The translations under genes were made by a program, and so were the position numbers. Source: Klebsormidium nitens (taxonomy: Eukaryota; Plantae; Klebsormidiophyceae). From it: a DNA stretch of 64,000 bases. The stretch covers positions 113,591-177,590 of the forward strand of contig DF237089.1 in NCBI GenBank assembly GCA_000708835.1, in the 5' to 3' direction. Numbering within the stretch: position 1 is the stretch's first letter; every line of letters starts with the position of its first letter. The notes under the pieces are model-generated. The model had not been told where the DNA came from and made no database searches. It worked only from the letters and a program-made list of their open reading frames with translations. Positions 2,063-52,100 of the stretch are shown piece by piece.

Positions 2063-5000
2063 CTAGCGCGCATGAGATGCGTGGGCATCAAACACGAACC
2101 CCTCCGCCTCTTCAACCGCAACGATTCTGTCGTCGGAAATTTCCGCCTTCTCGTCTTCCGGCTCCTCAAACGACACGCGTCTCTGCCGACCGCTCACCCT
2201 CCGGACATAATTCCCCCCCGGGGGCAAAGAATGATTCAGCCGCTTCCAAACCGAGTCCATCGATTCGGTAGTTTCACCCGGTTTGTTTCGGGGCGATCCT
2301 TCCTCGGGACTCGGATTTACGCCCGGCGGATGCCCAACCGCAAAATGGACAGTCCGCGACCTTCCTAAATCGCCGCTGGTTCGTTCCAGTAATCCGGCCA
2401 CGTCGCTCGTCCCCCGGGCGAGCCCCCGGGCGGGTCTTTCCCCCGGGAGCAGTTCCGCAGAGCTTCGCAAGCTTTTCAGCAGCCCCGACGCCTCGCTCTG
2501 CGCGCGCGCGGGCCCGCCGCGCGCGACCGACGACACGCTGCTCATCAGGAACGCCGACGCGCCCAGCTGTTTCGGGGGGGCACTGAGCGCGGTCTGGATG
2601 CCCCCCGGACGGAGTGAGCGGCCAAAAGCCCCGGCCGAGACGTCATTTTCGGCCCGGAGCATGGGGGAGTTCATCGGGGTGAGGGGCATCAACCCCTGCT
2701 TGCGCAGCCGGATGCGGGTCACAATCCCCCGAGCATGGGCCTGGGGAAAACAAGGTTAGGGGTAAGTTTACGTGAAACGAAGCTCCGAATTTCGAAACCG
2801 CAGCGGAATAAGCGGGTTTGTGGTTGTTCTAGTCTGCAAATTTTGGGTCTTGAAAGCTCGCAGGTGAGCTCGTTTTCAATCAATGGGCCCTTTTCTCTTT
2901 GATGTCGGTGCATACACGTGTTGTCGACAACGGGAGGGGTTGAGAAAGGCCGAATTATTCCTAGGCTCTCCTATTTGAACCCATCAGCCTTCATTTCGTG
3001 ATTAAAACAAACTTAAACGGGCAATTTGTGAGATTCCGAGTGGGTCGGACGCAACTCATGAAGACTTCACGATGATGTAAGTGCCGACTGACGTCAGCCC
3101 TCAAACATCGTCTCAAGTCCGGCCCTCACCTATAGGTCTCGATTTCATGTTGACTAGGCGTACGTTGACTAAATGAAAGCCCCCTATGGACGGGTAGGGC
3201 CTGGGGGTTAGGGTGGGTACGGGTGCGGAGCGGGTGTCATTTATCGGTTTAGGTTTTTAGGTTTGTTCGTTCCCCGAGCACTATCCTTAGTCAACATGCG
3301 CTTGGTCAACATGAAATCGAGAAGTATCCCTCACCTGGATGGTCATGGCCGCAATGGCCTTGGAGACGGACATGGTCTTCATGATCTTGGCCGGGTCATG
3401 GTTCTTCTTCTTCTCCAGCGCCTGCAGCCTTTTGGGCAGCGCGTTGAAGAACTTGCGCCGTGGGGACTGCAGCTTGTTGTGCAACAGACGGCGCAGACGC
3501 TTCTCCGCTTGGTACTGCACAGGGGAAGCACATACGCATGTTTTGAAGGCTCTTACAACCAATCCCATCCACTTGCAAGCAGGCGTATCGACTTCGCTTG
3601 ATCAGAGGAAAATCCTTCAGTCTAACGAGACATCGGAATTTATCAAAGCGGGAACCGTAAAAGGCCGCTGCACCTCTGTGAATCTTAAGGAATCTGATGG
3701 ACATTCGAGAGCGTGTGGAAAGTAGATAAAGAGAAAACAGCGCTTCGTCCAAGAGATGACTCGCTTTGAGTCGGCTCAACTTAACGACTTGAACGCCTTC
3801 TATGAAACCGAAGCACTTTCTAATATCTCTCACCCGGTATCTAAGTAGGTGGTTATCGACTTTCGCACTGGTGGAGAACGAAAAAGGGGTGCACTCACGT
3901 TCTTACAGAAATTAAAAACTGCCAGAAAGATGTTCGTGGAATCAGAAGCCAAGCAACGGTGCAGTGACTGGTCCGCAAGAAATAGTTGGCAACACCAAGG
4001 GCGCCACATCTGCGCTGTGATCTGTTCCCCGCCCGCTCACCTCGCACCACTGCGTGTTGAAAATGCTGGCCCCCAGCCTCTTGCTGTTCGCCGCCACAAA
4101 CGCGATCGTCACCAGCGAATGCAGCACCAGATCGTACGGCACCCCGCGGCTGAAGATGGGAATGTTCATTTTGCTCGCGAGCGGCAGGACCGCGCTCGGG
4201 CTCGGGCGCAGCGCGTTCTCGTCCGCGCGTTTCACCCCGAGGGGTTCCCCCAGGTCCGTCAGCAGCAGGTACAACTGCTCGGGGGTGATCCAACCGGTCG
4301 CGGTCGGGTCGTGCCGCGTCCACACCGCGTCGAACTTGCGGAGGACCACAGTGTTCACCACCCGGGAGTCCTGCGGGCGTCGGCCGAAACAAAGCTGGAT
4401 CCCAAAAAGTGCCGATCTCGCAACAGCGCGGCGAAACGGTTAAAAGTGGATTATCTGGTTCATCTGGTTCACCTGTGTTTTCCTGAAACGTTCTCTCTCG
4501 TGCAAAAACGGCTAGTATTAGACAGCAAGATGATCACCAAAGATTGTGCGATTGGTCTGAACACTCTTCGCTCAGATGTGGATATTTCTTATACGACAGA
4601 TATTTCCGGAAAAGGTTTTGCCAGGGACATGTAGCACAAGGCACGAACCTTGACCGCCAATCTGGCGCCAGACAACGACGATGCACGTCGAATAGACAGC
4701 GGGTTTGAACAGAGTGAGGGAAACAAGGAAACGGGTCGCGATCCGCGCGCGCGCACCTCGTCCTCGACCTCGCTGAAGGCCTCGATGATGATGGCGATCA
4801 CTAGGTTGAGCAGCACGAACTGGCCCAGCACCACGAACGTCACGAAGAACGGCACGGCCAGCCACGTGACGACCATGCAGTCGTGCATGATGAAGTTCCA
4901 GTTCTCGCCCGTCAGCATCTTGAACATCACCAGCAGGCTGTACGGGAACGTCGTGAAGTTGATGAGTGACGTCATGGACTCCAGCGGCCCGTCGGGCGGC

Positions 5001-8000
5001 ACGTGGCCGAAGAGCGCAACGCCGAAGATGGCGAAGATGTACAGCTGGAGCAGGAGCAGGCTGCCGACGGAGTACAGGTTGGGCAGCGCGGACACCAGCG
5101 ACTTGAGCAGCTTGTTCAACCCGTGGTGCGTCCTGCGCAGGGGGAATACAAGACGCTTTTCAGGACTGGGTTGTCAGAATTGAGCTTTCAAGGTCGAGTT
5201 TCAGGATCGATTTTCAGGACTAGGTTTGCAGATGGCTATTCAGGATTGAGTTCCAGGCTTGGGTTCTCAGGATTGCGTTTCCAGGGGTGGGTTTTCAAAA
5301 GCTTGAGCAGGTGGTCGGACTCTGTGGCCTTTTCTTGAGGTTCTTAGGTCTCTTGAGGTTCTTAGGTCGCTTTCTGGCCTGGGGAAGCGGCGAAGGAGTG
5401 AAAGAGGGCAGAGAGCAAAGAATCACTTGCAGAGGAAGCTCGGGTCTGAGTCCAATTGTTGTTGTGATTATACGGTCAGCTTTGAAGCCACCAAGTGTGT
5501 GTCATTCATATCTCTAATTTGATCCGTTTGCGTTAAAAGGAACACCTGCAAACAGTCTGCTTTTGCTTTGATCGGTCAAGGCGTCAAGCCTTTCGGGGTC
5601 GAGCCACTCGGCAATCCTTCAAGATGCTACTGATAAAAGGTTTCCAGCAATTCAAATGACAGCGGCGGCAGTAGTAAATGCGGGAACATCAATAGGCAGA
5701 ATTCCAGAGGGTTCACAGCGCCCGTGCCGGTTTGAAATTTTGCACAAATTGAATCGTCTCGCGGCGGCTTGCCTGGCCAGCTTGAGCATTCTGAGCACCC
5801 GGAAGCACCGCACGAGCGGCGCGCCCGGCCGCGCGCCCATGGCCTCCCCGGTGAAGGTCATGACTAGAATCACCAGGTCAAATAAGTTCCACCGGTGCTG
5901 GAAAAACTGGCGGACGCCCAACCCGAGCAGTTTCGCGGCGACCTCCGCCGAGAACACCCCCGCGAAGATCCAGCCGGAGTACCGCGCGAGCGCGCGCGTG
6001 CGCGCGCCGGGGGGCACCTCTTGCGTGCACAGGATGACCAGGTTCAGCGCAATCGCGGCCGCGAACGCGCGGTCGAAGTACGGGTGCTGGACCAGGTTGA
6101 AGAAGGACGCGCGCAGCGCGCGCGCGGGGGAGCGCTTCGCGGGCGGGCGCAGCGCGGCGTGCGAGCGCATTTTCTCGATGGCCTTTTGGGTCTCGACCCA
6201 CTCTTGCTGCATGGGGGTGAGGCCCTCGATCTCTTTGTCCTTCTTAATGTTGCCGAAGCTCTCGATGACGATACCTGCGTAGGAAGGGGCTCCAGAGATC
6301 AGGAAGCTGGGCTGACGGTGGCAAGCTGCAAAGATGGTAACGGGAAGACAGATACTCCTGCGTTGTGAGCGCTTGCCTGTACCACCAGACCCATGATTGG
6401 CAAAGCGGAAACATTTCTTGGGCGGGGAAAGATCCAAAAAAACGTCACCACAGCCACATAACAGCTGTGCTTGACATAAGCGTAATAAAAGCAAACGATT
6501 CGGGGTCGTAGTTGACTCTGAAGCAACCATTCTAAGTTCCGTTCTGCATACGAAGCGTTGTAAAGATATCCGATTGGGCTGCGTCCGCTCACCTACGAAG
6601 AGGTTGATGAGGAAGAGCGAGCCGATGGCGATGAATGCGATAAAGAAGAGCGACGCGTAGGGCCGGTAGTTGAGGATCGGCGCGTGGTCGATGGCCACGC
6701 TGTCCATTCCCGGGTACATCAGGTAGTTGGCATTCTCCGTCGTGCTCAGCTCGAAAAGAGTCAAAGCAGAAGCGCCCAGGTTGTCAAACGTGTAGGGCAC
6801 CGAATTGACCCACCTGGATCCGAGCAACGGGGAAATCAACGTTCAACCAATTTCGACTTGTCAGCTTTAGAGCTTTGTGAGTCTGTTTGCACGGATCTGG
6901 AGGGAAGTCGGATCAGCTTCTCGAAAGGAACAGGGATTGGATCTCGATCACTCGGAACAAACATCTGATGAGGACAATGAGACGGTTTTCAAAAGCCTTT
7001 AGTCATCATAAGGCAGGAGTTGGTAAGAAGAACAAGGTATCAATGGCTTACACGCTAAGATCAACACGGTGGCAACGCTTACACGCCCAAGCATATAGGA
7101 AACTGACAATCAAGATGACCGGCATGAAAACAGTCGGGATCTTCAGATGTTCTTTGAAAAGCTGAGAGCGACCCTGTCGAGATCACGACGCGAGATTGAA
7201 TGATTGAGAGGCACTCAAAATCTGGTGTGACGTCAGCGGGCTTACTCGCGCGTTTTATTGTACGCGTCCACGCCCGCGCAGTCCGCGCGCAGTTGGACGT
7301 CCGGGTCGGTGCACATGGAAAAGGCGCCGCCGAAGATCTGGACCCCCAGCGTGGCGAACACCAAAAAGATGACGGCGCCAATCATTACCACGCTCGTGCT
7401 CGCGCGGAACGCGCCCAGCAGGGCCGCGGCCACCATCTGCAGCCACGTGGAGAACCTTATCAGCCGAGGGGCGGCTTAACTGATCACCATAGCACTGCGA
7501 GACTGGAAACGCGAGGAGCTGAAGCCGTCGTTGAGGTAATTAGAAGCGGCTTGATACTAAGGAGAGGTTGCGGACCGCGAGAAAGACAGGAGAAGCTCCA
7601 CAGGATTCATTCACCAGTACAGGCCTCATTGGAGCTGCCTCAATCTTTCTTGATCTTAACTGATATCTGAAGCTTCATTACTGTGCTTGCAAAACCTCCG
7701 ACTTGCCAGGAGACAATGCTTGCAAACTATCCTTGCGTTTCATATTGCAAGGATATGTCTTTCGAGGACCCATGAGGGCCCCTCAGAGCTGAGGATTCCA
7801 GGTCCTCTTCAACAATTGAAACTTGCCCGGTGACCTCTTCTTCGGCGACCACTCACCCTGAGCCCCGGGGCGGTCTGCGCCAGCCTCAGCGCCCGGAAGA
7901 CTCGGAAGACGTGCAGCAGCGGCCACCGGTTCTTCGCCGCGACGCTGATGAGAGTGGTCAACGTACAAAGCGCGTCCAGAACGTTCCAGGGATCCCTCAG

Positions 8001-11000
8001 ATACGCACCCGGCTCAAAGAGGACGCCCAACTGCAATTTCAGCGAGGGCTTCAGAGCGGAGGATGGAGCGATTGGTAAACTCAAGCCTGGAGTGCAAATG
8101 GTCACCCTAGGAAAGGCCTTAAGAGGAGGGCAAAATTGAATCCCTAGTAAGACCGAGATGGACCTCTGAGTAGCAGCCAAACTAGGTATCTACCACCGAT
8201 TGTAGCGTGATCTACCGTGAAGCTAGCAGCAGACATAAGAGGACCGGAAGCAAAGCAAAACTTGGAGAAGCCGTCTGCACTGCAGGCTTCCGAGTGAAAG
8301 CTTTTTCGAAGACTAGATGAATGCTCCCTTTTCCTATCATATCCGCTTTCAAAGACCTAACCTTATACCTCAGCGCAGCGCCTCAGCCGTTCCTCGATTG
8401 AAAATCAATGCTGTGAGTTGCAGATCGATCTGAAGGATCCGGGGCCTCTATTTTGATGAAGCATTTGGCAGCTTGCCCCTAAAACTACCAAGAACGACCC
8501 GCCTCACCGCCGTCATCTTGAGCAGCACCTCGGTCGTGAAAAGCGCCGCAAACACAGCGTCCATCAGAACGATCGCCCTCCACTCGCGGCCGCCCTCGCG
8601 CATGGTCGGCCGGTCAGCCATCAGGATGAAAGTGCTCACAACCACGACAGCTGGCACCAGCCTCGTGAACCGCTTATCTACAATGAGCTGGTGAATCTTT
8701 ATCCGGAGGGGGTGCTGGTCCTTGAGTAGGAAGAAGGCTTTGCTCGACCCCCTGCGGAGAGGGCCCTTCTCCCTGCCACGTGTCGCCTTTCTGGCCAGGA
8801 TCGTGATGGGGTCCGAGCGCAGGTGTAAAGAAGGGATGTGGGCGAACGACAGGTGGCGCGCGAGCGACGGTTTCTTCAGCGGCCGCTGATCGATCAGACG
8901 GATCAGACTCTTCCACTGCACTTTCGGTTTCATGAGAGCGGTGATGCTCAGCCTCCGAGTCAGCCTCCGCTTCTCCGTCGCCTTTGTGTGGCCTCCCTTC
9001 GCCGGGCGGAGCATGATGTGCGGCGAAGACGCGCTCCGCTGCAGCGCGCGCGCGCCCTTCCCGTCGGCTGACGTCACCTTCGCTCCCGGCATGTGCAGTC
9101 GGGGCAGGTTGGGAACCGGCAATATTTCCATTTTTGACACTTCGCCTGACGGGGGCGGTGACACCACCTTCTGAAAGGAAACAGTGTTAAGTCCCGCTAC
9201 GAACCGAGCCGTCCGCTGCTTCCGTCCCCGAAGGCCCCTCGGAACGGCGGAACTGGGGGGATCCTCGGGAAGATCTCCCGAGCCCGATGATGACGCGGGC
9301 TCGTCTGATTGCGGCGTCACCCGAGAGGAGTTGGGGAAACTTTCGGCGTCCAGGTCAAGGGCGCTGTCAGACTGCCCCGTCAAAAGAGACGACGCAGCAC
9401 GGGGGGAGAGCGAGTCGACCCCGTTTTGCCCCTCGGTTGAAAACCCGGGCCCCCCCTTTCGCCCCTTCAAGCGGCTCCCCGCTCGCCACGTGGCGCTGAG
9501 GTCCATGGGCTTCGCCAGGTCGATGCCCAGCTTGGCGCACGCGGCGAGCGCGGCCGCCGATGACGACGTCATGCCTTCCTGCGATGACGTCATCCTTGAC
9601 TTGCGCCGCTCGTGGCCGGCCGCGAGCTGCGGCAAAGCGTTCGCGAGCGCGCTCTTGTCTTCCGGCCGGAACCGCGTGTGATTTCCTTTCCGCTCGCTTT
9701 TACCTTCTTTTATGATTCTAGCCAAGTCCCCCGGGTCAAACCGGGCGCTGGCTTGGGGGCTGATGGGAGGGGTGGCGGCCAGAGAATTCAGTCCGGTGTT
9801 TAGGGGGGTGCTTCCGGCGGAATCGAACACTTCAGGGTCGATGGGGAGGCCACGGAGCGAAGCCGACAACGGGAACGCTAGCTGCATCTCATTCTTGACT
9901 TTTGATTTCGCGTCTTTAGCCGCTGCTGACGTCGGACTTGGGGGCTCGGGTGGCGAAAGAAGGTCACGAGCCGCGTCAGCCGCGGCCGGCTTGTGCGCGC
10001 TCTGGTCGCGGATGCGCCGCAGAAACGCGCGCGGAGACAACATGGTCGCGAGGGTTTTGGGGGAGATCGGCTCGCTCACGTCGGCGCTCTTGCCGCGGAG
10101 GAGGTTGTTAGTGGAGCGCATCTTGTGCGCGCGCGCGCGAAAGCGCGCCATCTTCTGCTTGAGGGCCATGCCTGCGGGGTGACATTAGGGTAGTCGGATG
10201 AGAAACGATAAGGTAGCTTTGAGAAAAGGTCAAGGAGTTGCTTGCGACTCAACTATGTTGACGTTGACTTCTCCCTTTAAGTGAGTGAGCTATGAGCCTC
10301 TTGTACAAACTGAGACCATACGCTTTTCGTTACATTACAGAACGTGAAGGCGACGACTAAGAAGGCACGGGTTATGTGAGCTGCTTTTGTGCTTATACAA
10401 GACGAGTTTTGTGGTCAGCTTTTTAGGAGTCCTGTCTACGGCACTCATCGCGTGACCTTTCCTGTTTCCTGCAGCCAATAACCAGGAGCTTTACCAAACA
10501 GTAGGGTTATGAGTATCTGACGGTGCGACTACGGATCGCTCTGAAAACTCCCCTGTAAAAAGCCATACTTTCGGGTAGATTGTCCCCAATTCCCTCATCA
10601 TCAACCATCTGAGACAGGTTCCTGCGATGCGACATGACGTCATCCTTCAATTTAAAGCCAGCCCATGTTGAAATATTGTGCGGGCGCGCTTACCCGCGGA
10701 GAGAAACTTCTTCCGAAGCTCTCCGCTGAGGAGCTGCTCCCGCTGGGTGTTCTCCTCGAACGACTCGATAAGAATGGCCAGCAGCAGGTTCAGCAGGATC
10801 GTTCCGCCGGCCACGTGTACGAAGATGACGTAGGGCGCCGCCCACCAGCCGATGCCGCGGACCGCGGACGCAAGCACGTCGTTCCAGTTGTAGTTTGCAA
10901 TCACCTGACACGTCGAGCTTTCTAAGCTTTGAGTGCGTGGCCAGTTGTTTTAGCAGACGCTATCTTGAATCACAATGGTTTTGACTTTGTCATGGATCAG

Positions 11001-14000
11001 TCACGGAGCCCTGCTTTCTGACGAAAGGCCCGAACATGGTCTTTACGTGACACCCAAACCCACGGTATTGCAAATGGCAGTAGTTTTCAGATCCGAGCAT
11101 AATGAAGCAAACATGTCGTCTGCTCGGCAGACTCGTATATGTTGATGAGCATAAGACAACTCGTTAGACTGTTTCTCATGGGAAAGAAGGGCAGATTTCT
11201 CTGCTTATTTGCTAACCGAAGAAAGTAAATGGTACACAAATGTAATCCGACAGCTTGTTGGCAAATCGCGGTCATCACCTGGAAGGTGGTAAGGCATGCC
11301 CAGAAGAAGTTGTCGTAATTGGAGCGCGGCTCGCCGTCCGGGAAGCTGAGCTTGCCCGCCAGGATCTGCATCCCCAGCAGCGCGCTAACTAGGATGAAGA
11401 GCAGCAGCAGGAACGCGAACGGGCGCACCGCGCGCAGCGCGCTGAAGACGGACGACAGGAAGATGGCCAGCGACGGCCACTGGCCCGCCAGCTGGAAGAC
11501 CCGCAAAACGCGGAACGTGCGCATGGACGCCACGTTGTGGATGACGCGGCCGCTCGTGCCGAAGTCGACGAGCGCCATGACGAACATCGCGCCGTCGAAG
11601 GCGGTGAACGGGTCGCGGCAGAAGGGCACCGGGCCGTGCGCGAGCGCGCGCAGGCTGGTCTCCAGCAGGAACACGATCGTGCACGCCTGCGGGGGAGAGC
11701 TTTCTCTTTTGGTTTGTCATATTGAAAAGAACGGCGTTTCTAAGACAGAAGTCGTGAGCTTCCAGTTCCGGCGTTTTACCCGCTCTGCTCAGAGCAGGTG
11801 ATTAGAGAGTGCGGTTGTCTAAAGATCATCTCTTCCGAAAGCTGGTCCGAGCGGCAGAGCCTGAGTTCGCCAAGTCCGGAGACAGAAGAACGCAAAAGGA
11901 GCAGCTGAAAGGCCCAATGGCCTGCTCGGGTGAAAGACTGAATGAGCAAAATTCAGCGGATTTGAGGGAATGTAAATTCGTTGCGATCAAAGCAGGACGT
12001 TGAGCACTCACGAGGTCAACTCCGTTGATCGCGCTTCGCAGCTTGCGCGGCGCGCCCTCGTAGCGCAGCGCGAGCACCAGCAGATTGAAAACCACCACCA
12101 GAATGAAGCCGATGTCGACTCGCGGCCGCGCTAACGTCACCCGCAAATCCCTCCGCATTCTCCGCCACTTTCTCCGCACCAAGAACAGCCGGTGCCGGAT
12201 CCGATGCTTCCACGACACTCGCTCCTCGATTGTTTCGGTCTCCTCTAGTTCGTCCGTTTGCCGGAAGTGGGAGGAGTAGGAGGGGGTCCCGGGAGCAAGT
12301 TGGTCGTGCGCGTTTGCAATCGACTTCGACGACAAGGACTTTTGGCTAGACTTTCGAAAGCGCTGTCGAAAGCTGTCGAAGGCCTGCTTGGGCGAGCGCA
12401 GCGCGTTCCACAAGGGACTCCTCGGGGGATGCCGGGGCGTGCTGTTGAGGGCCTGCGAGAGACCGGGGCAAAGCACTGAACACTTTGAAGATTTCTGCGC
12501 CTTTCAAATCTTCTGCATGCCCGTCGATTGACCAAGTTTTGGACACCGGTCCAATCAACATGATCAAAATATGTGTGGACTTCTTTTCGATCAGATTCAA
12601 AAGCGTACCACCAGAATAGACAGAGGATTTATAGCTTATTCATAATAGCAACTCACAATCAAGACCCTGGAGCAGAAGATGATTGAAGTGTAGAATTTCT
12701 GGGTGGCTACCGTTTGCTCACCCGTGTTTCGATGCGCATCCGCCTCATGTTTTCCGCCTTGACGTGTTCCTCTTGCTTCCGCTTCTTGAAGTTGTCGTAC
12801 ACAACGGCAAGGGCCAAGTTCATGATAGCGAAAGCACCTGGGATGCAGGCGTGGCAAAAGATTCGGAAAAGCTCTTATGAAAGGCTTGGAGTGCATTCAT
12901 TGGCGCACTCCTGCCCTTCACCTTGCGATAGTGCTCTGTACTCAGAAGCCATTGCTGTATTGGCTTCTTTGATGCAGGAAGTAAAAACAATCGGCGGCCA
13001 ACTTCTGGCTTGAGATGAGCATGTTTCGGTGGTCAAGGAGCGACTCTGGAAGCAGAGGGTCTAAGGGATGAATTCATTTGGAAGCTCTTGGTTCCCTTGA
13101 TTGAAAGGGTCAAGCACATTTTGAATCTTATGAAAAGAATACACGATATCATGGGACAACTCAGAAGTCAAAGAAGCGCCCCGTTTATCCAGAGATTTAC
13201 TCAAAGGAATGTTGATGTCGTTCAAGAAGCGTATTGCAATCGGAATGGTCTGTGCCATGTGCCTCAGGAATGCCTGCAAAGCAATCTAACGTCAAGATTA
13301 AAAGAAGGACGATTGCCTAACCGAACGGAAACGGCCGGCCTCACCAAAGACCACCACGGTAATCCAGTAGAACACCGCCCAGACGCCCTCCGCCTCCACT
13401 GTTGCGTACATGTTATCGGACCAGCCCTCGAGCGAGATCGCCTCGAACAGGACAATCGCCGCGCGCGGCAGGTTCGAGAATGACGTCAGGTTTTCGCAGG
13501 GCCAGTGGCCAGTGTGCTCGCAGGAGGTGCCCGGGGGACACATGTGCGCCCAGGGCTTGTCCTGGCCGCTGCACCGCCGGCCGTCGGTGAAAGCCCCTGA
13601 GGCGTCCACGCACTGGCGGTCGAGGGATCCCCCGAAAAGCTGCACGCCCATGATGCCTGCAAGGTCGAAGGAGGGGGAATTTGGTGCTTCGTTTGATGCA
13701 CAGATGCTGCGTTCCTTAAGAGCCTCAGGGCTGGTCGAGCCGAGTTGTCAGGAAGCGAAAGGCTCGGAAAAGATACAACAGACGAGACACGCCGAGACAT
13801 CCTGCGGGACATAGTGCATAATTAGACGAAATAGGGCTTATGAAGTGACGGAACGAGGACGTGCTTGATAGTTGCCGGAAACCGACTTTTTCGTAAAGTG
13901 TCGGCAAATGCCAGAAAAAGGAGAGCCGGGAAAAGGGGCACTGACCGAAGAAGGTGAGGAAGAAGCAGAGGAGGAGCGAGACGTTCCCGAGGCGCGGCAG

Positions 14001-17000
14001 GGAGCTGAAGACTGTCCCCACCAGCACGCGCATGGTGGGGGACGCGCTCACGGTGCGCAGCGGCCGCAGCACGCGCACAACGCGCAGCACGCGCAGGAAG
14101 CCGAGCGGTAGGGCGCGGCCGCCGGTCGGGAGCTGCAGGGAGGGTTTGGAGGGTCCCCGGTTGATCGACGTCTCAATGCAACGTTCTCAGGGTTTGCGAA
14201 GTCATCCGATTCAACATTAGAACAAGAAGGTGCGGTGTGAAGGAGAAGTTGCGGGTGGAAGCATCGTACTCAAAGCGCCTGACCGTTCATACGATGCTAA
14301 GCGATTTGAACTTCCTTCCAGCGCTATCGGCTTATCTTGGAATAATAGTTGGACGCTTCTGATTTGATCGAAAAGAAGCGAACGGAGAACGGTCCAGGGT
14401 CAGCAAAAGGGGGCTCAAGGGGTCAGGGTTTATGGCTCACTTCTCAAGGGAAAGTTCACCACACAGTGACCCTATAGGAGTGGTAGAGGGAGCTACAACT
14501 ATCTGACCAAGGCTCAAACGAAAACTTTTTCTTTCTTCTGTATCGGTTCTGGGGGCGGCTCTTACCAGCACGACCAAGCTGGCCCATGTGAGAATGAAGT
14601 CCAGCACGTTGAGAGGGGACCGCAGGTACGCCGTCGGGTTGAGAAGGAAGCCGTATGCGACGATCTGTGACAAAGAACAGGCCCCGGTAAGGAAAGACGC
14701 GGACAAGTAATGTCAAGCGGCCTGTGGAGAACCAATTTTGTCCGCCTGGCCTTCGCTCCTTGACAAGTCAAGACCGGATGCCGCGTTCTCGGAGATACGT
14801 TTTCCCAGCCTTGACAATTGGCTGGTTTTGTTGGCTGGTTCTCTGAGCCCACACTCAGTAAGTTCAACAACGTACCTTCTGATCAACTCAAACATAGATC
14901 AGTCTCCCGAAAGTCACAATCAATACGACTCACATTGTCGGCTTACGTTTTCAGATCCAAAGAATGCAGGGCAAACATTCCCGACGCAAACAGGTCACGT
15001 CGGCCGGTTTCGAAATTTTGCGGGGCGCTGACCTTGAGGCCCATTTCGAGGAAGAAGACGGCAATGAAGCCGATGTCGATGCGGCGCACGAGCATGTTTC
15101 GGTGCGACGTCTCCGCCTGCGTGGGGCTGTATGTGGCCATGTCGACGCAGCTGCCCAAAATGCACACCAGCATCACGTGGCTGAAGAACCGGTGCTCCAC
15201 CACGCGCCGGCAGAGCATGCGGAACGGGTTGGTCGCCTCCAGGAAGAACAGGCTCTTGCTGAAGTCCTCCGTCTGTGGGGGAATGCAAGGGCTCGTAGGT
15301 GATTTCCATAGGGCAAGTTTGGAGTAATTCCGGCAAGGGATTTCCTGAAAAGTTATCCAAGATCCGCTTGTATTGCAACTCGAGAAAGGCTTGAACTCAG
15401 CAATGCGTGTCAAGGTTGGTCGCCTCCAGGAAAAAAGGCTCTTGGTGAAATCCTCCGTCTGCGGGGGGAGAGGCGAGGTCGTGCGCTTATTGCCTGTTGT
15501 GAGTATGGGTGATTTTTGGCGAGGAATTCCCCAAAAGTTACGATCCTGTTCAAGTTCTGCTTGGGTTACCAGTCAAGAGAGGCTGAGAATCACCTGCCCC
15601 TAAAGTTCTCACGGGGCATACGGACAAATGTTGATGAAAGTGAGCTGAAGCTTGTCAAGGCCTCGTATTGACCATCCCCGCAAGCCGTGCTTCAGACTCT
15701 CCGGCTCCTTTTCCCTCACGCAGCTTTCGCACTCGATCAAATGGCGGCATCCTCCCAACCAAGCCTAAAATACTCCTGGCGCCAACAAACGAGACGCGAC
15801 CGCTACCCTCTAACGTTGAATCTCCTGAATAAGCATTCTTCCAGCAGTCACGAACGTGGGCCAATCATGCTAAGAGAACCACAGCCCACCTGCATCGCGA
15901 AGTTCCTCGTTGCCGGCTTCTGGTGGTACCGCGCCAGCAGCTGCGCCGTCCGCGGCGTGGCCTGCGCGGTGCCTTCTCCCCCGTCGCTGTCTTGACTGAA
16001 CCGCACGGTCCTTTCCGACCGTTCATCTTGCGACGCATCGCTGGCCCGGTCGGACCTTCGCCGAAATGCCGACCGGCCTGGCTTTGTGCCGGAAACCGTG
16101 GGGACGTCCCCAGGCATCCCCTCAGATCGTCCGCTGCTCCCCCGGTCTAAAGTGTAAGCGTCCGAATCGGACGGCCGACGCTGCGGCTCGAATGTGAACA
16201 CCCCGCTCTGGTTCTGCGACGTGACCTCCACTCCGATCTCCATGCTATCCGTAATCCCGGGAAAATTGCCGCTGGGGTTGAACGCGAACGAGCTCCGCCG
16301 CGGCGCGCGCTTCCCGCTCGAGACCCGCTGGAACTGCCCGGTCGACGAGTCCTCACCTTGACTCGCGTCTTGTGTCTTGGCTTCTGATGCTGACGTGTCT
16401 TTCTTCACCTTCCCGGGTGCGTGTACCCGCACCCTCGGAAGATGGAACTTCGGCATCTCAGGCGAAGCGATCGGCAGCAAGCCTGGCTCCTGCTCTAAGC
16501 CTCGGCCCGACGGCCCCGATTGCCTGCTGCTACGAACAGGGGCCGCATCGGATGGGCCCACTCCGTTTGACGTTGCCGTAAGTTGGGAGTGAGGTGGACT
16601 CCCGGCAGAGTCCGAAAGGTTCTTGCTCGACAGCCGTGACAGTTGCGGGGAACGGGGACGGGAGTTTCCGCGGGAAAGGGGGGGACTGCTGGGGATGGCG
16701 GGGGGCTGAGCCCAAAGGCTGAAAGAGTCGCCCGACCTTTGTACCTGGATTGCGGCACTTGCTGCTTGCTGGGGTGATGTACTGGCTCTAGAAGTGGCGG
16801 AGGAGGGAGGGGCAACGTGTGGAGTTTCGGAAGAATGCTTTGGCGGTGCTTGAGAAGGGTCTGCATCAATCCGGCCTCCTCGTAGGTTTAAGGCTGGTTT
16901 TTGAGGAACAATGGGGTGCGGTGTTTTGGGAGGCACACCGTCTGCATGACCAAGAGTCTTTGCTGGTGCAATCTTAGGTGCCTCTTTTAGTACGAGGGCT

Positions 17001-18283
17001 GCTGAGGGGGGCGCATTTCTTTGTGCCGCAGCAGAAGAGCTAGCGCCAGCGTGTGATGAAGACACTGAAGTGGTGCTCCCGGCCGACGGAGCACCCTCTC
17101 TACTTTGGTCGCCATGTGCCCTTTTGGCACTTTCCACCCTGATGGGTACTGACTCCTTTGCGCTGACCTCTTCCAATGCTACCACCCCCGCCAAGATATC
17201 GGTCCTCCCCGTTGCCGCAGGATCTTCCCCAGAGCGTACATGCTGACTTGCCGCACCCAATGCCGTCCTGCGCTCCTGCTGCTCAGAAAGCGCCTCATTC
17301 AGGATTTGCCCTTCCGCCGGCGCCTCTTTCCTCGGCGACGCTCCCCGCCGCATGTTGCGCAAAACCCGCAGCCCCGCCGTAACTGCCGCAATGCCATTTG
17401 GGGCACCTGCGCCACCTGCGGAACCCGCTCTTACCCTCGGAACCACCAACCCATCCAAAGGAGAGCTTTCTACCCGTTTTGGAGATCTTGATGGCGCCCG
17501 CTTTGGGCTCAGCCCCTCACCGCTACCCACGGTGTCTGACCACCCTTCCACTATCTCCCCCCCCAGTGGTTCTATCACTTTGGCCCGCCGTTTACTTGGT
17601 GACTCAAGCTGCCCAGATCCTGGGCTTGGTGCTGGCCTCTTTTCGTCAAACCCCCCCGCCTGGTGCACACCGACCTTTGCAAAAAAAAATCCTTCGTGGG
17701 CCTCACCTATGGAGGCGCTCCGAGCCCGGCCGCTAGTGGTAGCTGCGTCCGGCATGGCTCCCTGCTCTGCATCCGGCCTTGCATTTGTGCTGTACAACTT
17801 AGCAGGCTTGCGCGGGGAAGCATTCCCACTTGCCACTCTTGAGGGGGGGTCTGGATGGGCGCTGAGAGCAGGCACTGGCAACCTCCGGTGGGCAAACACC
17901 GCTTCATCATCATTATGTGGTGGATCCTCATGTGTTGAATGATCCTTCTTTGCTTCCGGACTGCTCGGTGCCTTTGTCCCACCATTCTGCAAGGCCCCGA
18001 GCTTGATGGTTGCAAACCTGGCGGCATGGAACGCCGGTGACGGGCCAGCTCTAGGACTTCCCAGCTTTGAGCTCCTTTCCTGCTGCAAGCCATCTGTTCT
18101 AGAGCTGGCTGCCAATTGCTGCTCCCCATTGGAGACTGAGCTCTCCTCCTTTCTAGCTGGTCTACTCTTGGTTCTAGATGGAGAAGCGAGCTCTTTCGTA
18201 TCTGCCTTGGCGGCAGAGTCTGCCTCATGCGCTTGCAGCGGTGGCGGCTTCCTGGCGGGAGGCGGCGCCGAGGAGCCGTCCAT
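2063..18283 (-). CDS. Four-domain (4x6TM) voltage-gated Ca2+/Na+ channel alpha subunit, ~2907 aa, 18 exons
   Basis: Exons (minus): 15890-18283, 15033-15272, 14566-14664, 13946-14132, 13345-13656, 12722-12837, 12012-12452, 11279-11686, 10694-10904, 8508-10171, 7857-8030, 7246-7436, 6593-6813, 5773-6274, 4757-5132, 4041-4370, 3335-3514, 2063-2740. They sum to 8724 nt in phase. Four S4 segments (RVLRVVRVLRPLR, RTFRVLRVFQ, HVFRVFRALR, RCFRVLRMLK). P-loops ISLEGW, IANYNW, STTENA, LTGENW. S6 motifs MNLALAVV, LNLLLAIL, INLFVGIV, LNLVIAII. C-terminal EF-hand-like segment (VWTRHDPTATGWI) and IQ motif IQAHARGIVTR split by intron 17. The start codon at 18283 is the first ATG of the long first exon (inferred). 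Confidence 0.93.
3137..3322. mobile_element. MITE-like foldback element (copy 1) in channel intron 17
   Basis: ~37-bp imperfect terminal inverted repeats (tctcgatttcatgttgactaggcgtacgttgactaa ... ttagtcaacatgcgcttggtcaacatgaaatcgaga) around a G-rich core (gggtgcggagcgggtg...ttaggtttttag). The core is shared with 26479-26670. No clear target-site duplication. Confidence 0.65.
5158..5369. repeat. Degenerate intronic minisatellite (~14-bp ttcaggaNtgg-like units) plus a short ttcttgaggttcttaggtc duplication
   Basis: Repeated tttcagga/ttcagga/ctcagga/ttccagg units at 5158-5310, and cttgaggttcttaggtc twice at ~5334-5369, inside channel intron 14. Confidence 0.6.
15412..15550 (-). repeat. Tandem duplicate of the exon 2 acceptor and first ~45 nt of channel exon 2, with a 1-nt deletion (pseudo-exon)
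   Basis: ccccgcag|ACGGAGGATTTCACCAAGAGCCTTTTTTCCTGGAGGCGACCAACC at 15458 versus ccccacag|ACGGAGGACTTCAGCAAGAGCCTGTTCTTCCTGGAGGCGACCAACC at 15272. Upstream intronic words (ggtgattt, aaaagtta) are also duplicated. Confidence 0.8.
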
Positions 18284-45949: not shown

Positions 45950-48900
45950 TTATCGGCTCGCTAGAACCGCCTGCAAGGGTTCTCCTGATCGTCTGTCATG
46001 TTCTCGACTCCTTCTCAATGTACATAACAACTCAACGCAGTATATCGCGCTTATCATAAGCGCAAGGCACCCGCTCAGGATCTGCAGAACTGTCGCTGAT
46101 GACGTGGCGTTTTTGAGCGACAGGCCAACAAAGGGCCCCATGATCATGCCCCCCGAGTAGAGTCCGTCGTACAAAACAACTGCGACGGCTTCGTCTTCGC
46201 TTCCCGTCAGCTTCAGTGCGCTCACAAGCCGGGGGAAAGTGGGATCCCCCATCAAGGCCATGCCAAAACCTGCAAACGAAAGGCAGTTCCGTGTCAAGGT
46301 TTGCCTTGCAGCAAATTCCTTTGTTCGAAGTTCGACACCGTCTGAAAAGATTTGGAATGTCACCTTGATTTTTGATTTGGAAAAGCGTATGCTTGTCGTC
46401 TTTTGGAGGAAATCTTGAATGCTTCATAAAAATCGTTGACTGAGAGCTTCGATGGGTCCAAGGCTGTCCTTTCATGTTTTGAAACACAAATCTTCAGTCC
46501 TTCGTAGACTGCGTCTAAATGTAGATATCGGTACAAGAGGCAGTCTCTCCTCAGGCCCAGACATTGGGCAGGGCTCAAAGCCTTCTGGCAGAATCTGCGT
46601 TCCTACCCTCTCGATTCTCTTGACAACAACAATGCAAAGCTCTGAATTTATGCATTAAAATCTCTGAAAGTAAGAAGCAACGGTAACTTCTTCTCGGCGT
46701 GGCGCACTTTCTCCCCGTCTCGACCATTGAGACTGGTTCTGATGCGTAGGTGGTTACCGCAGCGATCGAACTTAACTCTGCGTCAGGAGAGAATCTCCCC
46801 GTCCAAAAGTTTCCCCGCCCAGGAGTTTCAAACAGGTATTTTTCCAACTAGGTGCGCCCCGCTTGTCTTATCGCCGGGTACAACGAAAAGCATGATTGGT
46901 AAGCAGGTTCGGCTTACCAACGGGAAGCATCACCAGCATTTGTGCCCAGAGCGCACAAAGCGCGGGCATGGCCATCACCGGCAGAACCGCCCCCATGGCA
47001 GCCGCCCCGAGAACCATAGTGTGAATATCCCCCACGGCGCCGATCATCCACGTGGTCGCCCAGTACGAAAACCAGCGTACGCGAGCGCGAGCGCGCCGAA
47101 GACGAGACCGGTCTCAGCGGCCGACACGTGGCAGGTGTCCTTCAGGAACAGCGGGACGACCGTGTCGAAGGCGCCCATAAGCAGCGCTTCCGCAAAGATA
47201 ACTAGAATGGCGGGAAACGCGTGCGCGCTCAGCAGCACGAGTCCCACTAGTGACCAAAAAACGGAGGGGGGCCGACCGCTGGGCTCCCCTTTAACTAAGT
47301 TTTCGCGGCTGATCTCTGGCGACTCGACTACTATTTGGGTTCTGCCCTGCTTTTCTTCGGGTACACTATCCTTGGTCAAAGTAGCTGAGGTTCTGGATAA
47401 CGCATTTGAGCGCCCAAAAATTCCCTTTGTTCCGCCGCTCGCGGAGTCATCACTCTGCTCGCTGCTACAGTAGCCGGAATAATCGCCGCCGGAATCGCTA
47501 TCGCTGGTGCTTTCTTCCTGCTCGCCGCCTTCTGCAAACGCCCCCAGCGCTGCGCCCTCCATGCGCTCGTTGCAAGGTTCCGGAATAGCAGCTGGTGTCA
47601 AGCCCAGCTGGACGTCCCTTTCTGGTGCTGCTTGACACTCCCCAAGCGCTTTCGCCCCAGTTTGAAGACCCTCGCTCTCGCCCGAATCCGACTTTTCTGG
47701 CCGTCCGTTCACACCGCCACTAATTTCGAACTTGGCTGCCGACCCTTCGATGCAAGTGCTCGGTTGCACCTCCGGGTTTCGGCCCAAACCCTGTTTCTCC
47801 TCCGCTCTGAATCCCAGTTCGCAGTCAACGGGTTCACTAGTACCTTCCCCAACGATCGCATCCGTCGGGAGAATGCGACCGCCGATCACCCACTTTACCA
47901 CGTGGCTTGAGCTAAGCAGCAGGATCAGCCCCAGGGTCGCTGACGTCAGCAGGCCGATAATAAAAAAAGGCAGCCACGCTTTGACCAGCCCGTATAGAAG
48001 GGGGACGAGAAACGGTCCGAAAACGTACCCCAACGATTGGGCCGCGAATAGCAGACCCACGCCCTGCATCAACCCATCCGCTTCGCCACCAGTAGCCTGC
48101 GTTCTTTCTGAGAAACGGTCAAATTCCGTTGCAACCCGCTCTCTGGATTACAAGGAGCAATCCTTGCTTGCTTGTCATCGGTTTCCGACTCACTTTCATC
48201 AACCTCCGAGGCGTCTTGTGGAGAGATCAGGGCGAGCACCTTGAACGGGTCAACGAAGCTGCTGGGCGGGTTAACCGGGAGGTTAGGCTTGACCGAGGTG
48301 AGGGTTCTGGGAACCCCGAATTCTGCCGGTGCCGCTGCAGCAACAGGAGACGTATGCCTCCGGTTCAGCCATTCCGGCGACCAAGAATCCGCGGCCGGAC
48401 TCGTCTCGTCGCCGGATTCGGGCGCCTGAATGACGTCAGCCTGACGGCGCGCTCTGACAGCGCGGTTGGGATTTAGAGCAGCCGTTCGGACAAGTTCGAG
48501 CGCGCGGATCGACTGCCTTCCGCCCACAATGACGCTCGCGCTCCGCAGCGCCGTCAAGATTCCGGCGTCGCCACTGTTCCGGCGGAACGAGCTGCCGTAG
48601 TTCGTTGCAAGGGCACGCCGTGAGAGCGCGCGCCGCAGAACTTTCGGATGGGGGGTGGCGACTTGGGCTTGCTCTAGAGCTGGCTCCTTTCCCCCCTCTT
48701 GCGACGATCTCGCCCCTCCTTCATACCCAGAGCTCTGAAGCTTCGTAACCATGGCTAGTGCCGCGGCAAACAGGAACTCGGCACTGGCCCCCATCAAAAC
48801 CAGCGCCCCGTAGAGCTGCCATAGGCTATGGTTGAGCCCGAGCAGCGCGCATGACACCAGAAGCGCGGTGAGACCCATTGTAAGCACGGGCAGGTGACCA

Positions 48901-49112
48901 GTGTTAAGCAGAAGAAACGTCGACGGAAGCATTGCCGCGAGGGTTGCGCCGTAACCCACCGCTATCAGGTTTGCGACGGTTTGCTCTGAGCCCCCGAAGT
49001 GGGCAACTAGATATGGCAGGAGGGGGACTATAGCTCCGGCGATCATGGCGTCAAGGAAAAGGCCCGTGCTGACCAGGCCCCGGAGAACGGGGGCCAACCG
49101 GGGGGGCACCAT
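45950..49112 (-). pseudogene. MFS transporter paralog A (SLC18/DHA1-like) with two apparent frameshifts
   Basis: Collinear with paralog B (52143-55449). It has the same single phase-1 intron position (46270-46917). Frame breaks lie near 48090-48110 (stop at 48069) and at ~47065-47075 (11 nt versus 12 nt in B between two TAC codons). Confidence 0.7.
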
Positions 49113-52100
49113 GGTCACTGCAACGACGAGAAGAAATCTCTCACCGGGTGTTCGCTTGGCGCGCACCGCACTTTCAACGCATTTCTGATTGACTTTAGGT
49201 TCATTGCAGTCGTGAAAAGTGTCCATCTGCCGCCCTTTCTCTACGTGGTTCGCTGATTCGAGCTGAGGAATACAAACGCTGAGCGACAAATCTCAGCAAA
49301 CCTTGTTGCCTAGTTGCAAGTTTATCCGATAGAAAAGGTGCCTGAACACGTGATGATGATATCCACCGCAAATATTGTGCACACTACTAGGGGCTTGACA
49401 GGTTTTGAACGGCAAAGGTGCTTTGGTTTACCTGCAGATGTTCCCCACCCAGCGTGCTACCACTTCCGCCCACAAGCTGTCCAGCACGTTCTTTTCAAAC
49501 CCCGTTCTAACAGCAAAAGCAAAAGTTCCAGTGCCATTGCTGAGGGGAATTTCATGGCATTCCAAAGTTGGCCTGCCACTCGTTCTGAGAAGAGAAATGG
49601 ATGGGCTAATATGTGAAGACCCGCCAGAAGTTCCATAAGCTGAAAGCCTTTTTATGTACTCACATTTCTTGTATTAGCAATGGCTTCCGACCTTCTTATC
49701 TGCCACACTGGTCCCTGCAGGTGCACCACAGCATCGGTGAGGGATGCTGAGGCTTGCGAGCCGTATATTACAACGAGGCGACTAAATCTGCATTGCGGGT
49801 CGCTCAGCATGTTACGTAGCCCCCCGCACTGAGGGTTGACAACCGGATTCTGGTGCCATCCCTCGCTCTGGTGCTTGACATGACTTCGTGGGAAGTCGCT
49901 TGAGTCACATCCTTCGAATATCCCCCAACAACCGGGGTTCTCCAGTTCCCTCTGATCGAACGCAATCTCCATAGTGACGGTGAACTAAATACTGACGCCG
50001 GATCAGACTCAAGCCTTCTTGAAAGACGGCTATAATGCAGCAGCCTCCGTGTTGTCTAAGCTCGTAGGATGCTTCGACTCAGAAACATCTGAGAATCCAA
50101 GCAAAGTATCTAAGGATCCAGATCAAGCGCCGATTCAGTCGACGGTCCGGCTCCACTTCTCCTCTGTCAACTTGAGCAGTAATGCAGACTCTAGATACCA
50201 AATGTTATTCCAGCCTTCTGTCATTACAACTTACAAGCTTTCAAGCGCCGACTGTGATCGTGCATCAAATCCTACTCTATCGTATCAGATCAGGGGTCGG
50301 ATTGGAGTGAAAGACAATATCGTGATCTGACATGATTGATTCTAGGACCGGAATAGGCTGACTCAATGATCATATCGAAATTGAGAACGTGTGCAATCAT
50401 TGAATAGATAGCGTACACAAAAGGCAGACCTGTATTCTGGTCGAGGCCACTTGCTTCTGGAACTCAAAGATATTTTTAGTTTCAGCGTTGACCAGAGCCA
50501 TCATTGTTGAGCAGATACAGATCTGAAATGGAGTGACGCAACTATTGGAACCCGGCTTTGATACGCTGCAAGGTGGCCCACCATTTCGGATTAAACTAAA
50601 CGAATGCCAGATCTTCTTGACCAAATCACAATCCCGGACAGCATTCGCAGGCTGGTCAACGTTGCCCTTTTGCCCTTTCGTCAGACGGAAGTAGGACGGA
50701 AATAATGCCGGGACCTCGAAATAACCGGGAGTCGGATATCTACAGTCTGAACCATGCTGATTGATGATCGCACAGAGGTTGGATGCTATGTGCAAAGAGA
50801 GTCAATTGCAGGCGGGGTCCGTCAGGCACTGTCATGACTCGCTGCACGTCTGAAGCTTATTGATAACTCGCAGTGCATGATCCGGTACCCTATGGCACAC
50901 CGAAAAGTGCGGTAAATCTGTGTGTCAGATAAAGCCAGCCAGGGCCGAGGCCGGGGCCCCGCCGCCGACTTGGTAAGCTACCTAGCTATAGCCTACACTG
51001 CTACAGCCTGGGTGTGACGGTACGGTCACACTTCCCGGCCGACGATTGGAATCCTACCGACCTTCGCGCGCGCGCGTAGCTTTCAATGATTGCCATCGAC
51101 CCAGACCACGTGGCAGAAACCATTTCCTTTCAACACAGACCGTCCGATAAAGGGTGATCGTAACCCGGGGTTTGCCCGTTCCAACTATGTTCGAGCTACG
51201 GTGCTACGAGCTGGTCAGGAAAGGGTCAGGAATTCAGAATCAAAGGAAGGATCAAAGTGGTTGAAGTAGGTTCTCGCTCGTGGTTCACCACCGACTTCAA
51301 TTTAACAAGCACTGCCGCCTCAGACGCACGCTTACCCGGCAGCCGCAAAACAGTATTGTTTGTCATCATGTGCACTAAAGGAGCACAGAAGAGGATCCTT
51401 GGAAACAAAACCAAGCTTTCAAGCTGTCTGGTACAAGTATGGAATTGGTTTTATCATCATCACGCTCAATTCAATGGTGCTGCGCGCTGGCTTGCCAAGC
51501 ATTCCGAAGTATTTGAAGGGCCTTTGCGCATGCAACGATCCGCTTGATTAAATTCGAGGGGTCCGGAACCAGTGCATGTGCGGAAGCCTCATCAGTAGCT
51601 TAAGAACTCGAAGGTCTTAAAAGAAGAGAAACCTTGACGATTGATCATTCATCTTAATATTTTCAAACAGCCGCCGTGCATTTTGGACGTCGGAGTCAGC
51701 AACCGCAGTACTGTGACAAACCACCGCTTTTTGGGGCTTATAACTAGGCTGCCACTCGCTCGATTCTGACTGACTTAACGGTTTGAAACTAAATTGAAAC
51801 TAAGATGAGCTCTTAGGACTTCATCGGATTATGAAGGGGCCGTCTGGTCAAGGTTGGCAAATAGATTCAGGAGTAGGACGTGCCCTAGGTAACAACTCCA
51901 GGATACCTGCTGCCATAAAAGGCACTTGTGAGACAACATGGCTTCGGCGCACTCCACGTACTGATAAGAGAAATCAGAACGGGGGCATCGGAAATATTGT
52001 AGGTAGCACCGAGTGTTTGAGGTCATGCAACCCTTGTTTTGAATGAGTCTACGACCTCAGATTAGATTTCTAGCAACATGCGAAGCGCGCATTTCAACTG

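What the first reader, a model, noticed from the sequence alone, without database searches (positions are those of the whole stretch)
4898..13429. Four-domain channel with a non-canonical E/Y/E/E selectivity filter and loss of the domain III pore tryptophan
Seen in sequence: the filter residue (two before the conserved Trp) is E in DI (LEGW, 13427-13429), Y in DII (Q-V-I-A-N-Y-N-W, 10890-10892, aligning with canonical Q-I-L-T-G-E-D-W), E in DIII (6735-6737) and E in DIV (GENW, 4904-4906). DIII reads TTENAN, with Ala in place of the near-invariant Trp (6729-6731). Established: Cav channels use EEEE, Nav DEKA, and NALCN EEKE/EKEE/EEEE. Inference: a bulky aromatic residue in DII with only three acidic residues could give altered Ca2+/monovalent selectivity or a distinct channel subtype. 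The otherwise intact 2907-aa frame argues against simple decay.
Basis: partly seen in the sequence, partly recalled or inferred. Interest (0 to 1): 0.82.

Follow-up and report, generated by a model that had tools for sequence, protein, structure and literature searches.

The report
Algal voltage-gated channel with altered pore
The soil alga Klebsormidium nitens expresses and conserves a voltage-gated calcium-channel relative whose pore ring has three acidic residues plus one neutral one and lacks a near-universal tryptophan, a real but untested natural pore variant.

Summary
On the minus strand an 18-exon, 2907-aa gene encodes a four-domain voltage-gated channel. Its filter residues are E (DI), Y (DII), E (DIII) and E (DIV), and Ala replaces the DIII pore Trp, all at the stated codons. 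Spliced contigs from three runs of one study confirm the 11279/10904 junction and the Tyr codon. One contig covers the DIII motif without change. The window is Klebsormidium nitens.

Six related loci (about five distinct lineages) all keep E/E/E in DI, DIII and DIV wherever covered. They also keep the DIII Ala, with three synonymous codons. dN/dS is 0.07-0.19, so the gene is neither decaying nor an artefact.

The Tyr is clade-specific. K. nitens and two relatives read A-N-Y in DII, while a sister clade reads T-G-P. These three codons carry 5 of the exon's 8 non-synonymous differences.

The conserved design is therefore E/x/E/E without the DIII Trp, not "Tyr". The channel sits among green-lineage Cav-like channels, and its nearest relative has E/D/E/E with all four Trp. 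I infer a Ca2+-permeable, less selective, voltage- and calmodulin-regulated channel.

The scan logged this same stretch from an overlapping window (s1-323189) and a V/T/D/D paralogue elsewhere in this genome (s1-290858). This is a new variant of a known kind.

The parts
2063..18283 (-). Coding region of the four-domain channel gene: 18 exons, 2907 aa. Exons: 18283-15890, 15272-15033, 14664-14566, 14132-13946, 13656-13345, 12837-12722, 12452-12012, 11686-11279, 10904-10694, 10171-8508, 8030-7857, 7436-7246, 6813-6593, 6274-5773, 5132-4757, 4370-4041, 3514-3335, 2740-2063.
   Evidence: The model was assembled with no internal stop. Junctions 6 to 13 are supported by spliced RNA contigs or their loose ends. 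The other junctions are inferred from GT/GC-AG sites plus conservation in orthologous loci. Pfam Ion_trans matches six exon ORFs.
13415..13441 (-). Domain I pore loop AISLEGWSD; filter Glu (residue 1050) at 13427-13429.
   Evidence: The motif is identical in L001, L003 and L004.
10905..11278 (-). Intron 8, between TTFQ and VIANYNW, with a GT donor and an AG acceptor. The 8 bases CAGGTGAT occur at both boundaries.
   Evidence: Sequence. The joint is seen in contigs of runs X1, X2 and X4. The intron position is shared by all orthologous loci.
10878..10904 (-). Domain II pore loop VIANYNWND; filter-position Tyr (residue 1404) at 10890-10892. The variable triplet A-N-Y lies at 10890-10898.
   Evidence: Tyr aligns to the E of Cav3 QEDW. 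A-N-Y is kept in L003 and L007 with synonymous codon changes, and is T-G-P in L001 and L004-L006.
6723..6746 (-). Domain III pore loop STTENANY; filter Glu (residue 2172) at 6735-6737; Ala (residue 2174) in place of the pore Trp at 6729-6731.
   Evidence: Transcribed without change in the X1 contig covering 6591-6811. The motif is identical in the four loci that cover DIII (L001, L003, L004, L005), with Ala codons GCC, GCA and GCG.
4892..4915 (-). Domain IV pore loop LTGENWNF; filter Glu (residue 2463) at 4904-4906.
   Evidence: Identical in L001, L003 and L004.
14055..14093 (-). Domain I S4 voltage-sensor helix with five Arg at every third position.
   Evidence: Conserved in L003 and L004.
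11492..11524 (-). Domain II S4 with three Arg.
   Evidence: This exon's best solved-structure match is Cav1.1 at 3.7e-34.
7875..7913 (-). Domain III S4 with His plus three Arg.
5773..5810 (-). Domain IV S4 (R, R, R, K; the last Arg is completed across the inferred GC-AG intron 14 at 5132).
4251..4334 (-). C-terminal EF-hand-like region of the Cav/Nav type.
   Evidence: Pfam GPHH at 25.3 bits, just under the 26.8 cut-off. The same weak hit is recorded on the orthologous loci.
2699..3352 (-). IQ calmodulin-binding motif, matching IQxxxRGxxxR. It is split by intron 17: exon 17 ends at 3335 and exon 18 starts at 2740.
   Evidence: Both halves are present in L001 and L003.
15890..18283 (-). Long low-complexity N-terminal exon of about 798 aa. 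The start codon and the junction to exon 2 are inferred only.
   Evidence: ORF. Junction candidates. It aligns as coding to L003 with dN/dS 0.31. No reads were laid on it.

Best explanation
This is a working gene of Klebsormidium nitens for a voltage-gated, probably calmodulin-regulated, four-domain cation channel of the green-lineage Cav-like family.

Shown. It is intact, correctly spliced, transcribed and under purifying selection. Its four voltage sensors keep their S4 arginines. Its pore ring is E/Y/E/E, and the domain III pore helix has Ala where nearly all relatives have Trp.

Shown by comparison. Relatives of K. nitens keep Glu in domains I, III and IV and keep the domain III Ala. The domain II filter triplet is fixed as A-N-Y in the K. 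nitens clade and as T-G-P in a sister clade.

Inferred. The pore works with three glutamates and one neutral wall. By analogy with other three-acid rings (Nav2/DSC1 DEEA, fungal Cch1 NEEE) it should still pass Ca2+, but with weaker Ca2+ selectivity and more monovalent current than an EEEE channel. Loss of the domain III Trp, which normally makes inter-repeat hydrogen bonds that stabilise the pore loops, probably loosens or reshapes the filter on that side.

The burst of change in the domain II triplet between clades, followed by conservation within the A-N-Y clade, suggests that this wall was retuned after the acid was lost.
For: Codons and alignment are. Splicing and transcription: five GT-AG joints, including 11279/10904, appear in contigs of runs X1-X4. 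There are no variants at the Tyr or Ala codons.

Ion_trans matches six exon ORFs and GPHH matches weakly. The S4 arginines and the IQ motif are conserved.

Organism: a neighbouring ORF is 100% identical to K. nitens KFL_001400230.

Orthologues L001 and L003-L007 are. dS is 0.28 with dN/dS 0.07 against L003, and dS is 0.73 with dN/dS 0.18 against L001.

The DIII motif is identical in five genomes despite synonymous changes, including the Ala codon. A-N-Y is kept with synonymous changes in three lineages. The DII triplet has 5 non-synonymous differences over 6.7 sites, against 3 over 150 sites in the rest of exon 9.

Tree: the channel is sister to P0021 (E/D/E/E, all four Trp; support 0.99) inside a clade with Pleodorina, Pedinophyceae, Prasinoderma and Micromonas channels.

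Precedents: DEEA channels conduct Ca2+ (PMC3591268). The Trp ring forms inter-repeat hydrogen bonds and is absent only from Cch1 domain I among the channels compared in PMC6259924.
Against: There are no electrophysiology data and no structural model, because the tools could not take a spliced protein. Selectivity is therefore inferred from analogy only.

RNA support comes from one study, at low contig depth (about 3-6).

The direction of change at DII (which state is ancestral, and whether the acid was lost once or twice) is not resolved.

The Pro-type clade shows no synonymous variation in the triplet, so constraint there is not demonstrated.

The N-terminal exon and several junctions are inferred, not read-supported.
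Confidence: 0.6

Rival explanations
1. One reading: the domain II Tyr is itself the adaptive selectivity determinant (through its hydroxyl or a cation-pi contact) and defines a distinct channel subtype with its own ion preference. The Pro-type sister clade would be a second such subtype.
For: A-N-Y is conserved in three lineages with synonymous codon changes at the Ala and Asn codons, with dS up to about 0.5-0.7 over this 70-codon exon. The triplet changed at about the synonymous rate or faster between clades, while the rest of the exon has dN/dS of about 0.04. Neither Tyr nor Pro was seen at this position in 147 homologues.
Against: Two chemically unrelated residues (Tyr, Pro) are both tolerated in otherwise nearly identical pores. 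That fits a position that simply needs to be non-acidic. Three codons are too few for a formal test of positive selection, and a single multi-nucleotide mutation could explain the cluster. There are no functional data.
Confidence: 0.25
2. The pore is functionally compromised and the protein is kept mainly as a voltage sensor or scaffold, as in non-conducting Cav1.1 variants.
For: The Trp that stabilises the pore loops is missing in domain III, and one filter acid is lost. The S4 sensors are fully conserved.
Against: Pore loops I, III and IV, including all three Glu, are identical across clades despite dS of about 0.7. The pore exons have among the lowest dN/dS values (exon 9 is 0.09, exon 13 is 0.10). 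Such conservation is not expected for a dead pore.
Confidence: 0.08
3. It is an artefact or a decaying gene: a wrong splice model, an assembly error or a pseudogene.
For: None found. Only the low RNA contig depth and the single RNA study leave any room.
Against: The junction is seen in three runs, and the transcript sequence is identical at the key codons. The 2907-aa frame is intact. dN/dS is 0.07-0.19. The same motifs occur in six independently assembled loci. No alternative DII pore exon exists in introns 7-9.
Confidence: 0.02

Closest known systems
Green-lineage four-domain Cav-like channels (the clade holding the Pleodorina protein labelled from gene symbol CAV2, plus Micromonas, Prasinoderma and Pedinophyceae channels; Chlamydomonas CAV2 is the studied example)
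   Same: It falls in the same tree clade. It has four Ion_trans repeats, charged S4 helices and an acidic pore ring with an N or D after the filter residue.
   Different: The nearest relative, P0021, has E/D/E/E and all four Trp. This channel has a neutral DII residue, no DIII Trp, an N-terminus of about 800 aa and a II-III linker of about 500 aa. Published surveys report odd rings in Chlamydomonas (D/D/D/D, T/E/N/D; PMC5824947), but in what I read they do not report this ring.
Animal T-type channels (Cav3, EEDD)
   Same: They are the best solved-structure matches for the DIII pore loop to S6 (2.7e-26) and for the DII P2 helix to S6 (1.7e-12), with the same DIII turret length. Cav3 proteins are also among the top full-length hits.
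   Different: The ring is E/Y/E/E, not EEDD. The DII S1-S5 region matches Cav1.1 better. The channel has a Cav1/Cav2/Nav-type C-terminal EF-hand-like region and an IQ motif. It is not in the animal clade.
Nav2 / DSC1 / BSC1 channels (DEEA ring)
   Same: They have three acidic residues plus one neutral residue in the ring. They are voltage-gated, and the ring is reported to conduct Ca2+ (PMC3591268).
   Different: Their neutral residue is Ala in domain IV, not Tyr or Pro in domain II. All four pore Trp are present. They belong to a different, Nav-related lineage.
Fungal Cch1 (NEEE ring, no Trp in domain I)
   Same: It combines one neutral filter position with loss of one pore Trp (PMC6259924).
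   Different: In Cch1 both changes are in domain I and the S4 charges are depleted. Here the neutral residue is in DII, the missing Trp is in DIII, and all four S4 helices are charged.
Rhodelphis marinus channel P0124 (E/A/E/E)
   Same: It is an independent case of a neutral DII filter residue together with loss of the DIII Trp, which is Phe there.
   Different: It is distantly related and is not in the sister group of this channel. Its residues are Ala and Phe rather than Tyr/Pro and Ala.

Membership tests
[quoted passage not shown] | Four Ion_trans (6-TM) repeats in one polypeptide | tested here: met
   Pfam Ion_trans matches exon ORFs of all four domains. Solved Cav and Nav chains match at up to 3.7e-34.
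[quoted passage not shown] | S4 helices with basic residues at every third position | tested here: met
   There are 5, 3, 3 (+His) and 5 basic residues in DI to DIV, conserved in the orthologues.
[quoted passage not shown] | Pore Trp at filter +2 in every domain | tested here: not met
   DIII has Ala. W is present in DI, DII and DIV. 143 of 148 homologues have W in DIII.
Calcium-selective Cav channels (EEEE or EEDD ring) | Acidic residue at the filter position of all four domains | tested here: not met
   DII is Tyr, and Pro in the sister clade.
Calcium-selective Cav channels (EEEE or EEDD ring) | Asp next to the DII filter residue (the 'calcium beacon') | tested here: not met
   DII reads Y-N-W, with Asn at +1. 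An Asp is kept at +4.
Cav1/Cav2/Nav-type C-terminus | EF-hand-like domain followed by an IQ motif | tested here: inconclusive
   GPHH scores 25.3 bits, just under the 26.8 cut-off. An IQxxxRGxxxR motif is present across exons 17/18 and conserved. Calmodulin binding was not tested.
Nav channels (DEKA/DKEA) | Lys in the DII or DIII filter position | tested here: not met
   The ring is E/Y/E/E.
NALCN / Cch1 leak-type channels | Depleted S4 charges and an EEKE, EKEE or NEEE ring | tested here: not met
   The S4 helices are fully charged. NALCN chains are only weak matches, at about 4e-5.
Green-lineage Cav-like clade | Groups with chlorophyte and prasinophyte four-domain channels in a tree | tested here: met
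   FastTree on 972 trimmed columns and 147 sequences: sister to P0021 (0.99), within a group holding Pleodorina, Pedinophyceae, Prasinoderma and Micromonas. Deeper nodes have moderate support (0.69-0.74).

The most novel reading that the evidence does not exclude
After the domain II acid was lost, two Klebsormidium clades fixed different three-residue filter walls (A-N-Y and T-G-P) under episodic positive selection. Together with the shared loss of the domain III Trp, this would create pore types with ion preferences not seen in any characterised four-domain channel. It would be a natural case of selectivity retuning in the algal lineage close to land plants.
Probability: 0.2. Interest if true: 0.7.

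Novelty: new variant of a known kind. Interest (0 to 1): 0.45.

Why it matters
Four-domain voltage-gated channels are said to have been lost in land plants (PMC6259924, PMC6509283). Their presence has also been linked to flagella, with a putative candidate reported in the moss Physcomitrella (PMC4685582). Klebsormidium belongs to the streptophyte algae, the lineage that includes the land plants.

This channel offers a natural, selection-tested experiment on two rules of pore design, the four-acid ring and the four-Trp brace. It also offers a matched pair of natural variants, Tyr-type and Pro-type, for testing what the domain II wall contributes.

It does not overturn anything. Surveys already describe protist channels with unusual rings.

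Tried and rejected
- Two metagenome scans with the DII and DIII exon alignments found no relatives.
- The exhaustive representative search found no close full-length orthologue. It found only a 200-aa fragment at 75% identity, and everything else was at or below 34%.
- The K. nitens annotated protein for this gene never appeared, so I could not use it as a reference.
- A word-based search from the sister protein P0021 returned no Klebsormidium protein.
- MAFFT in automatic mode timed out. I used the fast progressive mode instead.
- I looked for an alternative, canonical DII pore exon in introns 7, 8 and 9 on both strands and found none.
- My first guess that the window was apicomplexan was wrong and was dropped.
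- A scan of the gene for long direct repeats found none.
Full report
**Observation**

The minus strand between about 2063 and 18283 carries a multi-exon gene whose exon ORFs match Pfam Ion_trans six times. One C-terminal ORF weakly matches the Cav-type GPHH domain.

- LEGW, with E at 13427-13429.
- VIANYNW, with Y at 10890-10892.
- TTENAN, with E at 6735-6737 and A at 6729-6731.
- GENW, with E at 4904-4906.

HMMER alignments to solved T-type channels place the Tyr on the Glu of QEDW in domain II. In domain III they place the Glu and Ala on the Asp and Trp of SKDGW, without gaps.

**Splicing and expression**

Four runs of one study hold parts of the stretch. Their contigs, laid on 6500-12499, show five joints with GT-AG ends on the gene strand, so they derive from spliced RNA.

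The contested joint, 11279 to 10904, appears in three runs. Eight bases (CAGGTGAT) are the same at both boundaries, so the cut point is ambiguous by alignment, but the mRNA is the same either way.

No difference from the genome was reported at the Tyr codon. One contig covers 6591-6811, the domain III motif, with no change. Loose ends of contigs fixed three further junctions.

Intron 14 needs a GC donor. That junction and the N-terminal exon are inferred, not read-supported.

No alternative domain II pore exon lies in introns 7-9.

**Organism**

A neighbouring ORF is 100% identical to Klebsormidium nitens KFL_001400230. This confirms a lead from earlier notes of this scan.

**Architecture**

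All four S4 helices keep their basic residues (5, 3, 3 plus His, and 5). A C-terminal EF-hand-like region is followed by an IQxxxRGxxxR motif split by intron 17. This is the layout of voltage-gated Cav/Nav-type channels, not of NALCN or Cch1.

By solved-structure similarity, the domain II sensor is closest to Cav1.1. The domain II and III pore halves are closest to Cav3.

**Relatives**

An exhaustive profile-free search found only a 200-aa fragment at 75% identity. Otherwise it found channels at or below 34% identity, from varied protists and animal T-type channels.

In a tree of 147 sequences the protein is sister to P0021 with support 0.99. P0021 is an unnamed channel on a gene-dense ENA contig. 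The pair sits in a group with Pleodorina, Pedinophyceae, Prasinoderma and Micromonas channels. P0021 has E/D/E/E and all four Trp, so the two oddities arose on the Klebsormidium branch.

Across 149 homologues:
- Domain II is acidic in 143 of 147, and is never Tyr or Pro.
- The domain III Trp is present in 143 of 148, and is never Ala.
- One Rhodelphis channel independently shows E/A/E/E with Phe for the domain III Trp.

**Orthologues**

The fragment led to a 160-kb metagenome contig carrying the orthologous gene (L001). A search with the domain II exon ORF gave four more short proteins, and from them five further loci.

All six loci share the intron positions. Wherever covered, they all read LEGW, TTENAN and GENW.

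Domain II falls into two states:
- V-I-A-N-Y-N-W in the window, L003 and L007.
- V-I-T-G-P-N-W in L001, L004, L005 and L006.

**Selection**

Over the transmembrane exons:
- Window against L003: dS 0.28, dN/dS 0.07.
- Window against L001: dS 0.73, dN/dS 0.18.
- The low-complexity N-terminal exon, window against L003: dN/dS 0.31.

The domain III motif is unchanged despite synonymous differences in several of its codons. The Ala codon itself is GCC, GCA or GCG.

Within the Tyr clade the triplet is kept with synonymous changes: GCA/GCG/GCC, AAC/AAT, TAC. Between clades the triplet carries 5 non-synonymous differences over 6.7 sites. The other 67 codons of the exon carry 3 over 150 sites. That is a sharply local burst of change between clades, followed by conservation within the Tyr clade.

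The Pro clade is too shallow to show constraint. Three codons are too few for a formal test, and one complex mutation could have changed them together.

**Interpretation**

The conserved design is three glutamates plus a non-acidic domain II wall, with no Trp in domain III. The Tyr is real and is kept in its own clade, but it is not the common denominator.

Reviews state that the pore Trp residues form inter-repeat hydrogen bonds. [quoted passage not shown]

Three-acid rings are known to pass Ca2+ in DEEA channels (PMC3591268). Cch1 has NEEE. Protist channels with unusual rings are already catalogued (PMC5824947; PMC6259924).

I therefore infer a voltage-gated, Ca2+-permeable cation channel with weaker Ca2+ selectivity than an EEEE channel. 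This step is inference. No current has been measured, and I could not model the spliced protein.

**Novelty**

This is a divergent member of a known family with a pore combination I did not find described. It comes with an unusually clean natural contrast between two clades.

A paralogue with V/T/D/D was followed up elsewhere in this genome (s1-290858, not checked here).

Interest is moderate. The finding is real and testable, but it lies within the known tendency of non-animal four-domain channels to vary their filters.

Noticed in passing
window 15227-15281 and 15414-15467: A segment of about 55 nt that straddles the exon 2 acceptor is duplicated 186-187 nt upstream inside intron 1, at 89-95% identity. 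This creates a second in-frame acceptor at 15458 that would add 62 aa. It resembles the 'junction echo' introns noted elsewhere in this genome. Which acceptor is used was not checked.
   Followed up: partly
window 10897-10907 and 11272-11281: The same 8 bases, CAGGTGAT, sit at the donor and the acceptor of intron 8, so the exon start after the acceptor looks like a donor site.
   Followed up: no
window 5133-5772: Intron 14 appears to use a GC-AG pair (AG|GCAAGC). This was inferred from frame and orthologue conservation only, with no reads laid there.
   Followed up: partly
window 8900-9099 and 11300-11499: RNA contigs of much higher depth (20-56) match only short parts of these bins and then continue into unrelated sequence (loose ends at 9037 and 11324). 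Other abundant transcripts seem to share a short stretch with this gene.
   Followed up: no
window 59879-61255 (+): A 459-aa ORF with a reverse-transcriptase domain (RVT_1, 3e-10), probably a retroelement.
   Followed up: no
window 47047-49289 (-) and 52966-55599 (-): Neighbouring MFS transporter ORFs. The ORF at 52966-55599 is 100% identical to K. nitens KFL_001400230. KFL_001400225, on the same contig, is 57% identical to it and probably corresponds to the ORFs at 47047-49289, suggesting a tandem pair.
   Followed up: partly
L001 and L004 (both from JGI metagenome 3300060285): Two different contigs of one metagenome each carry a full Pro-type orthologue, with dS of about 0.2 between them. 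They are either two related species in the sample or two diverged copies.
   Followed up: partly
P0124 (Rhodelphis marinus): An unrelated channel has both a neutral domain II filter residue (Ala) and a non-Trp residue (Phe) at the domain III pore position, the same two sites as here. This could hint at coupling between the two sites.
   Followed up: no
P0073 (Pleodorina starrii): A four-domain channel is named 'Caveolin-2' in the public record. This is apparently a mis-expansion of the gene symbol CAV2. Its ring reads S/E/S/E in my alignment.
   Followed up: no
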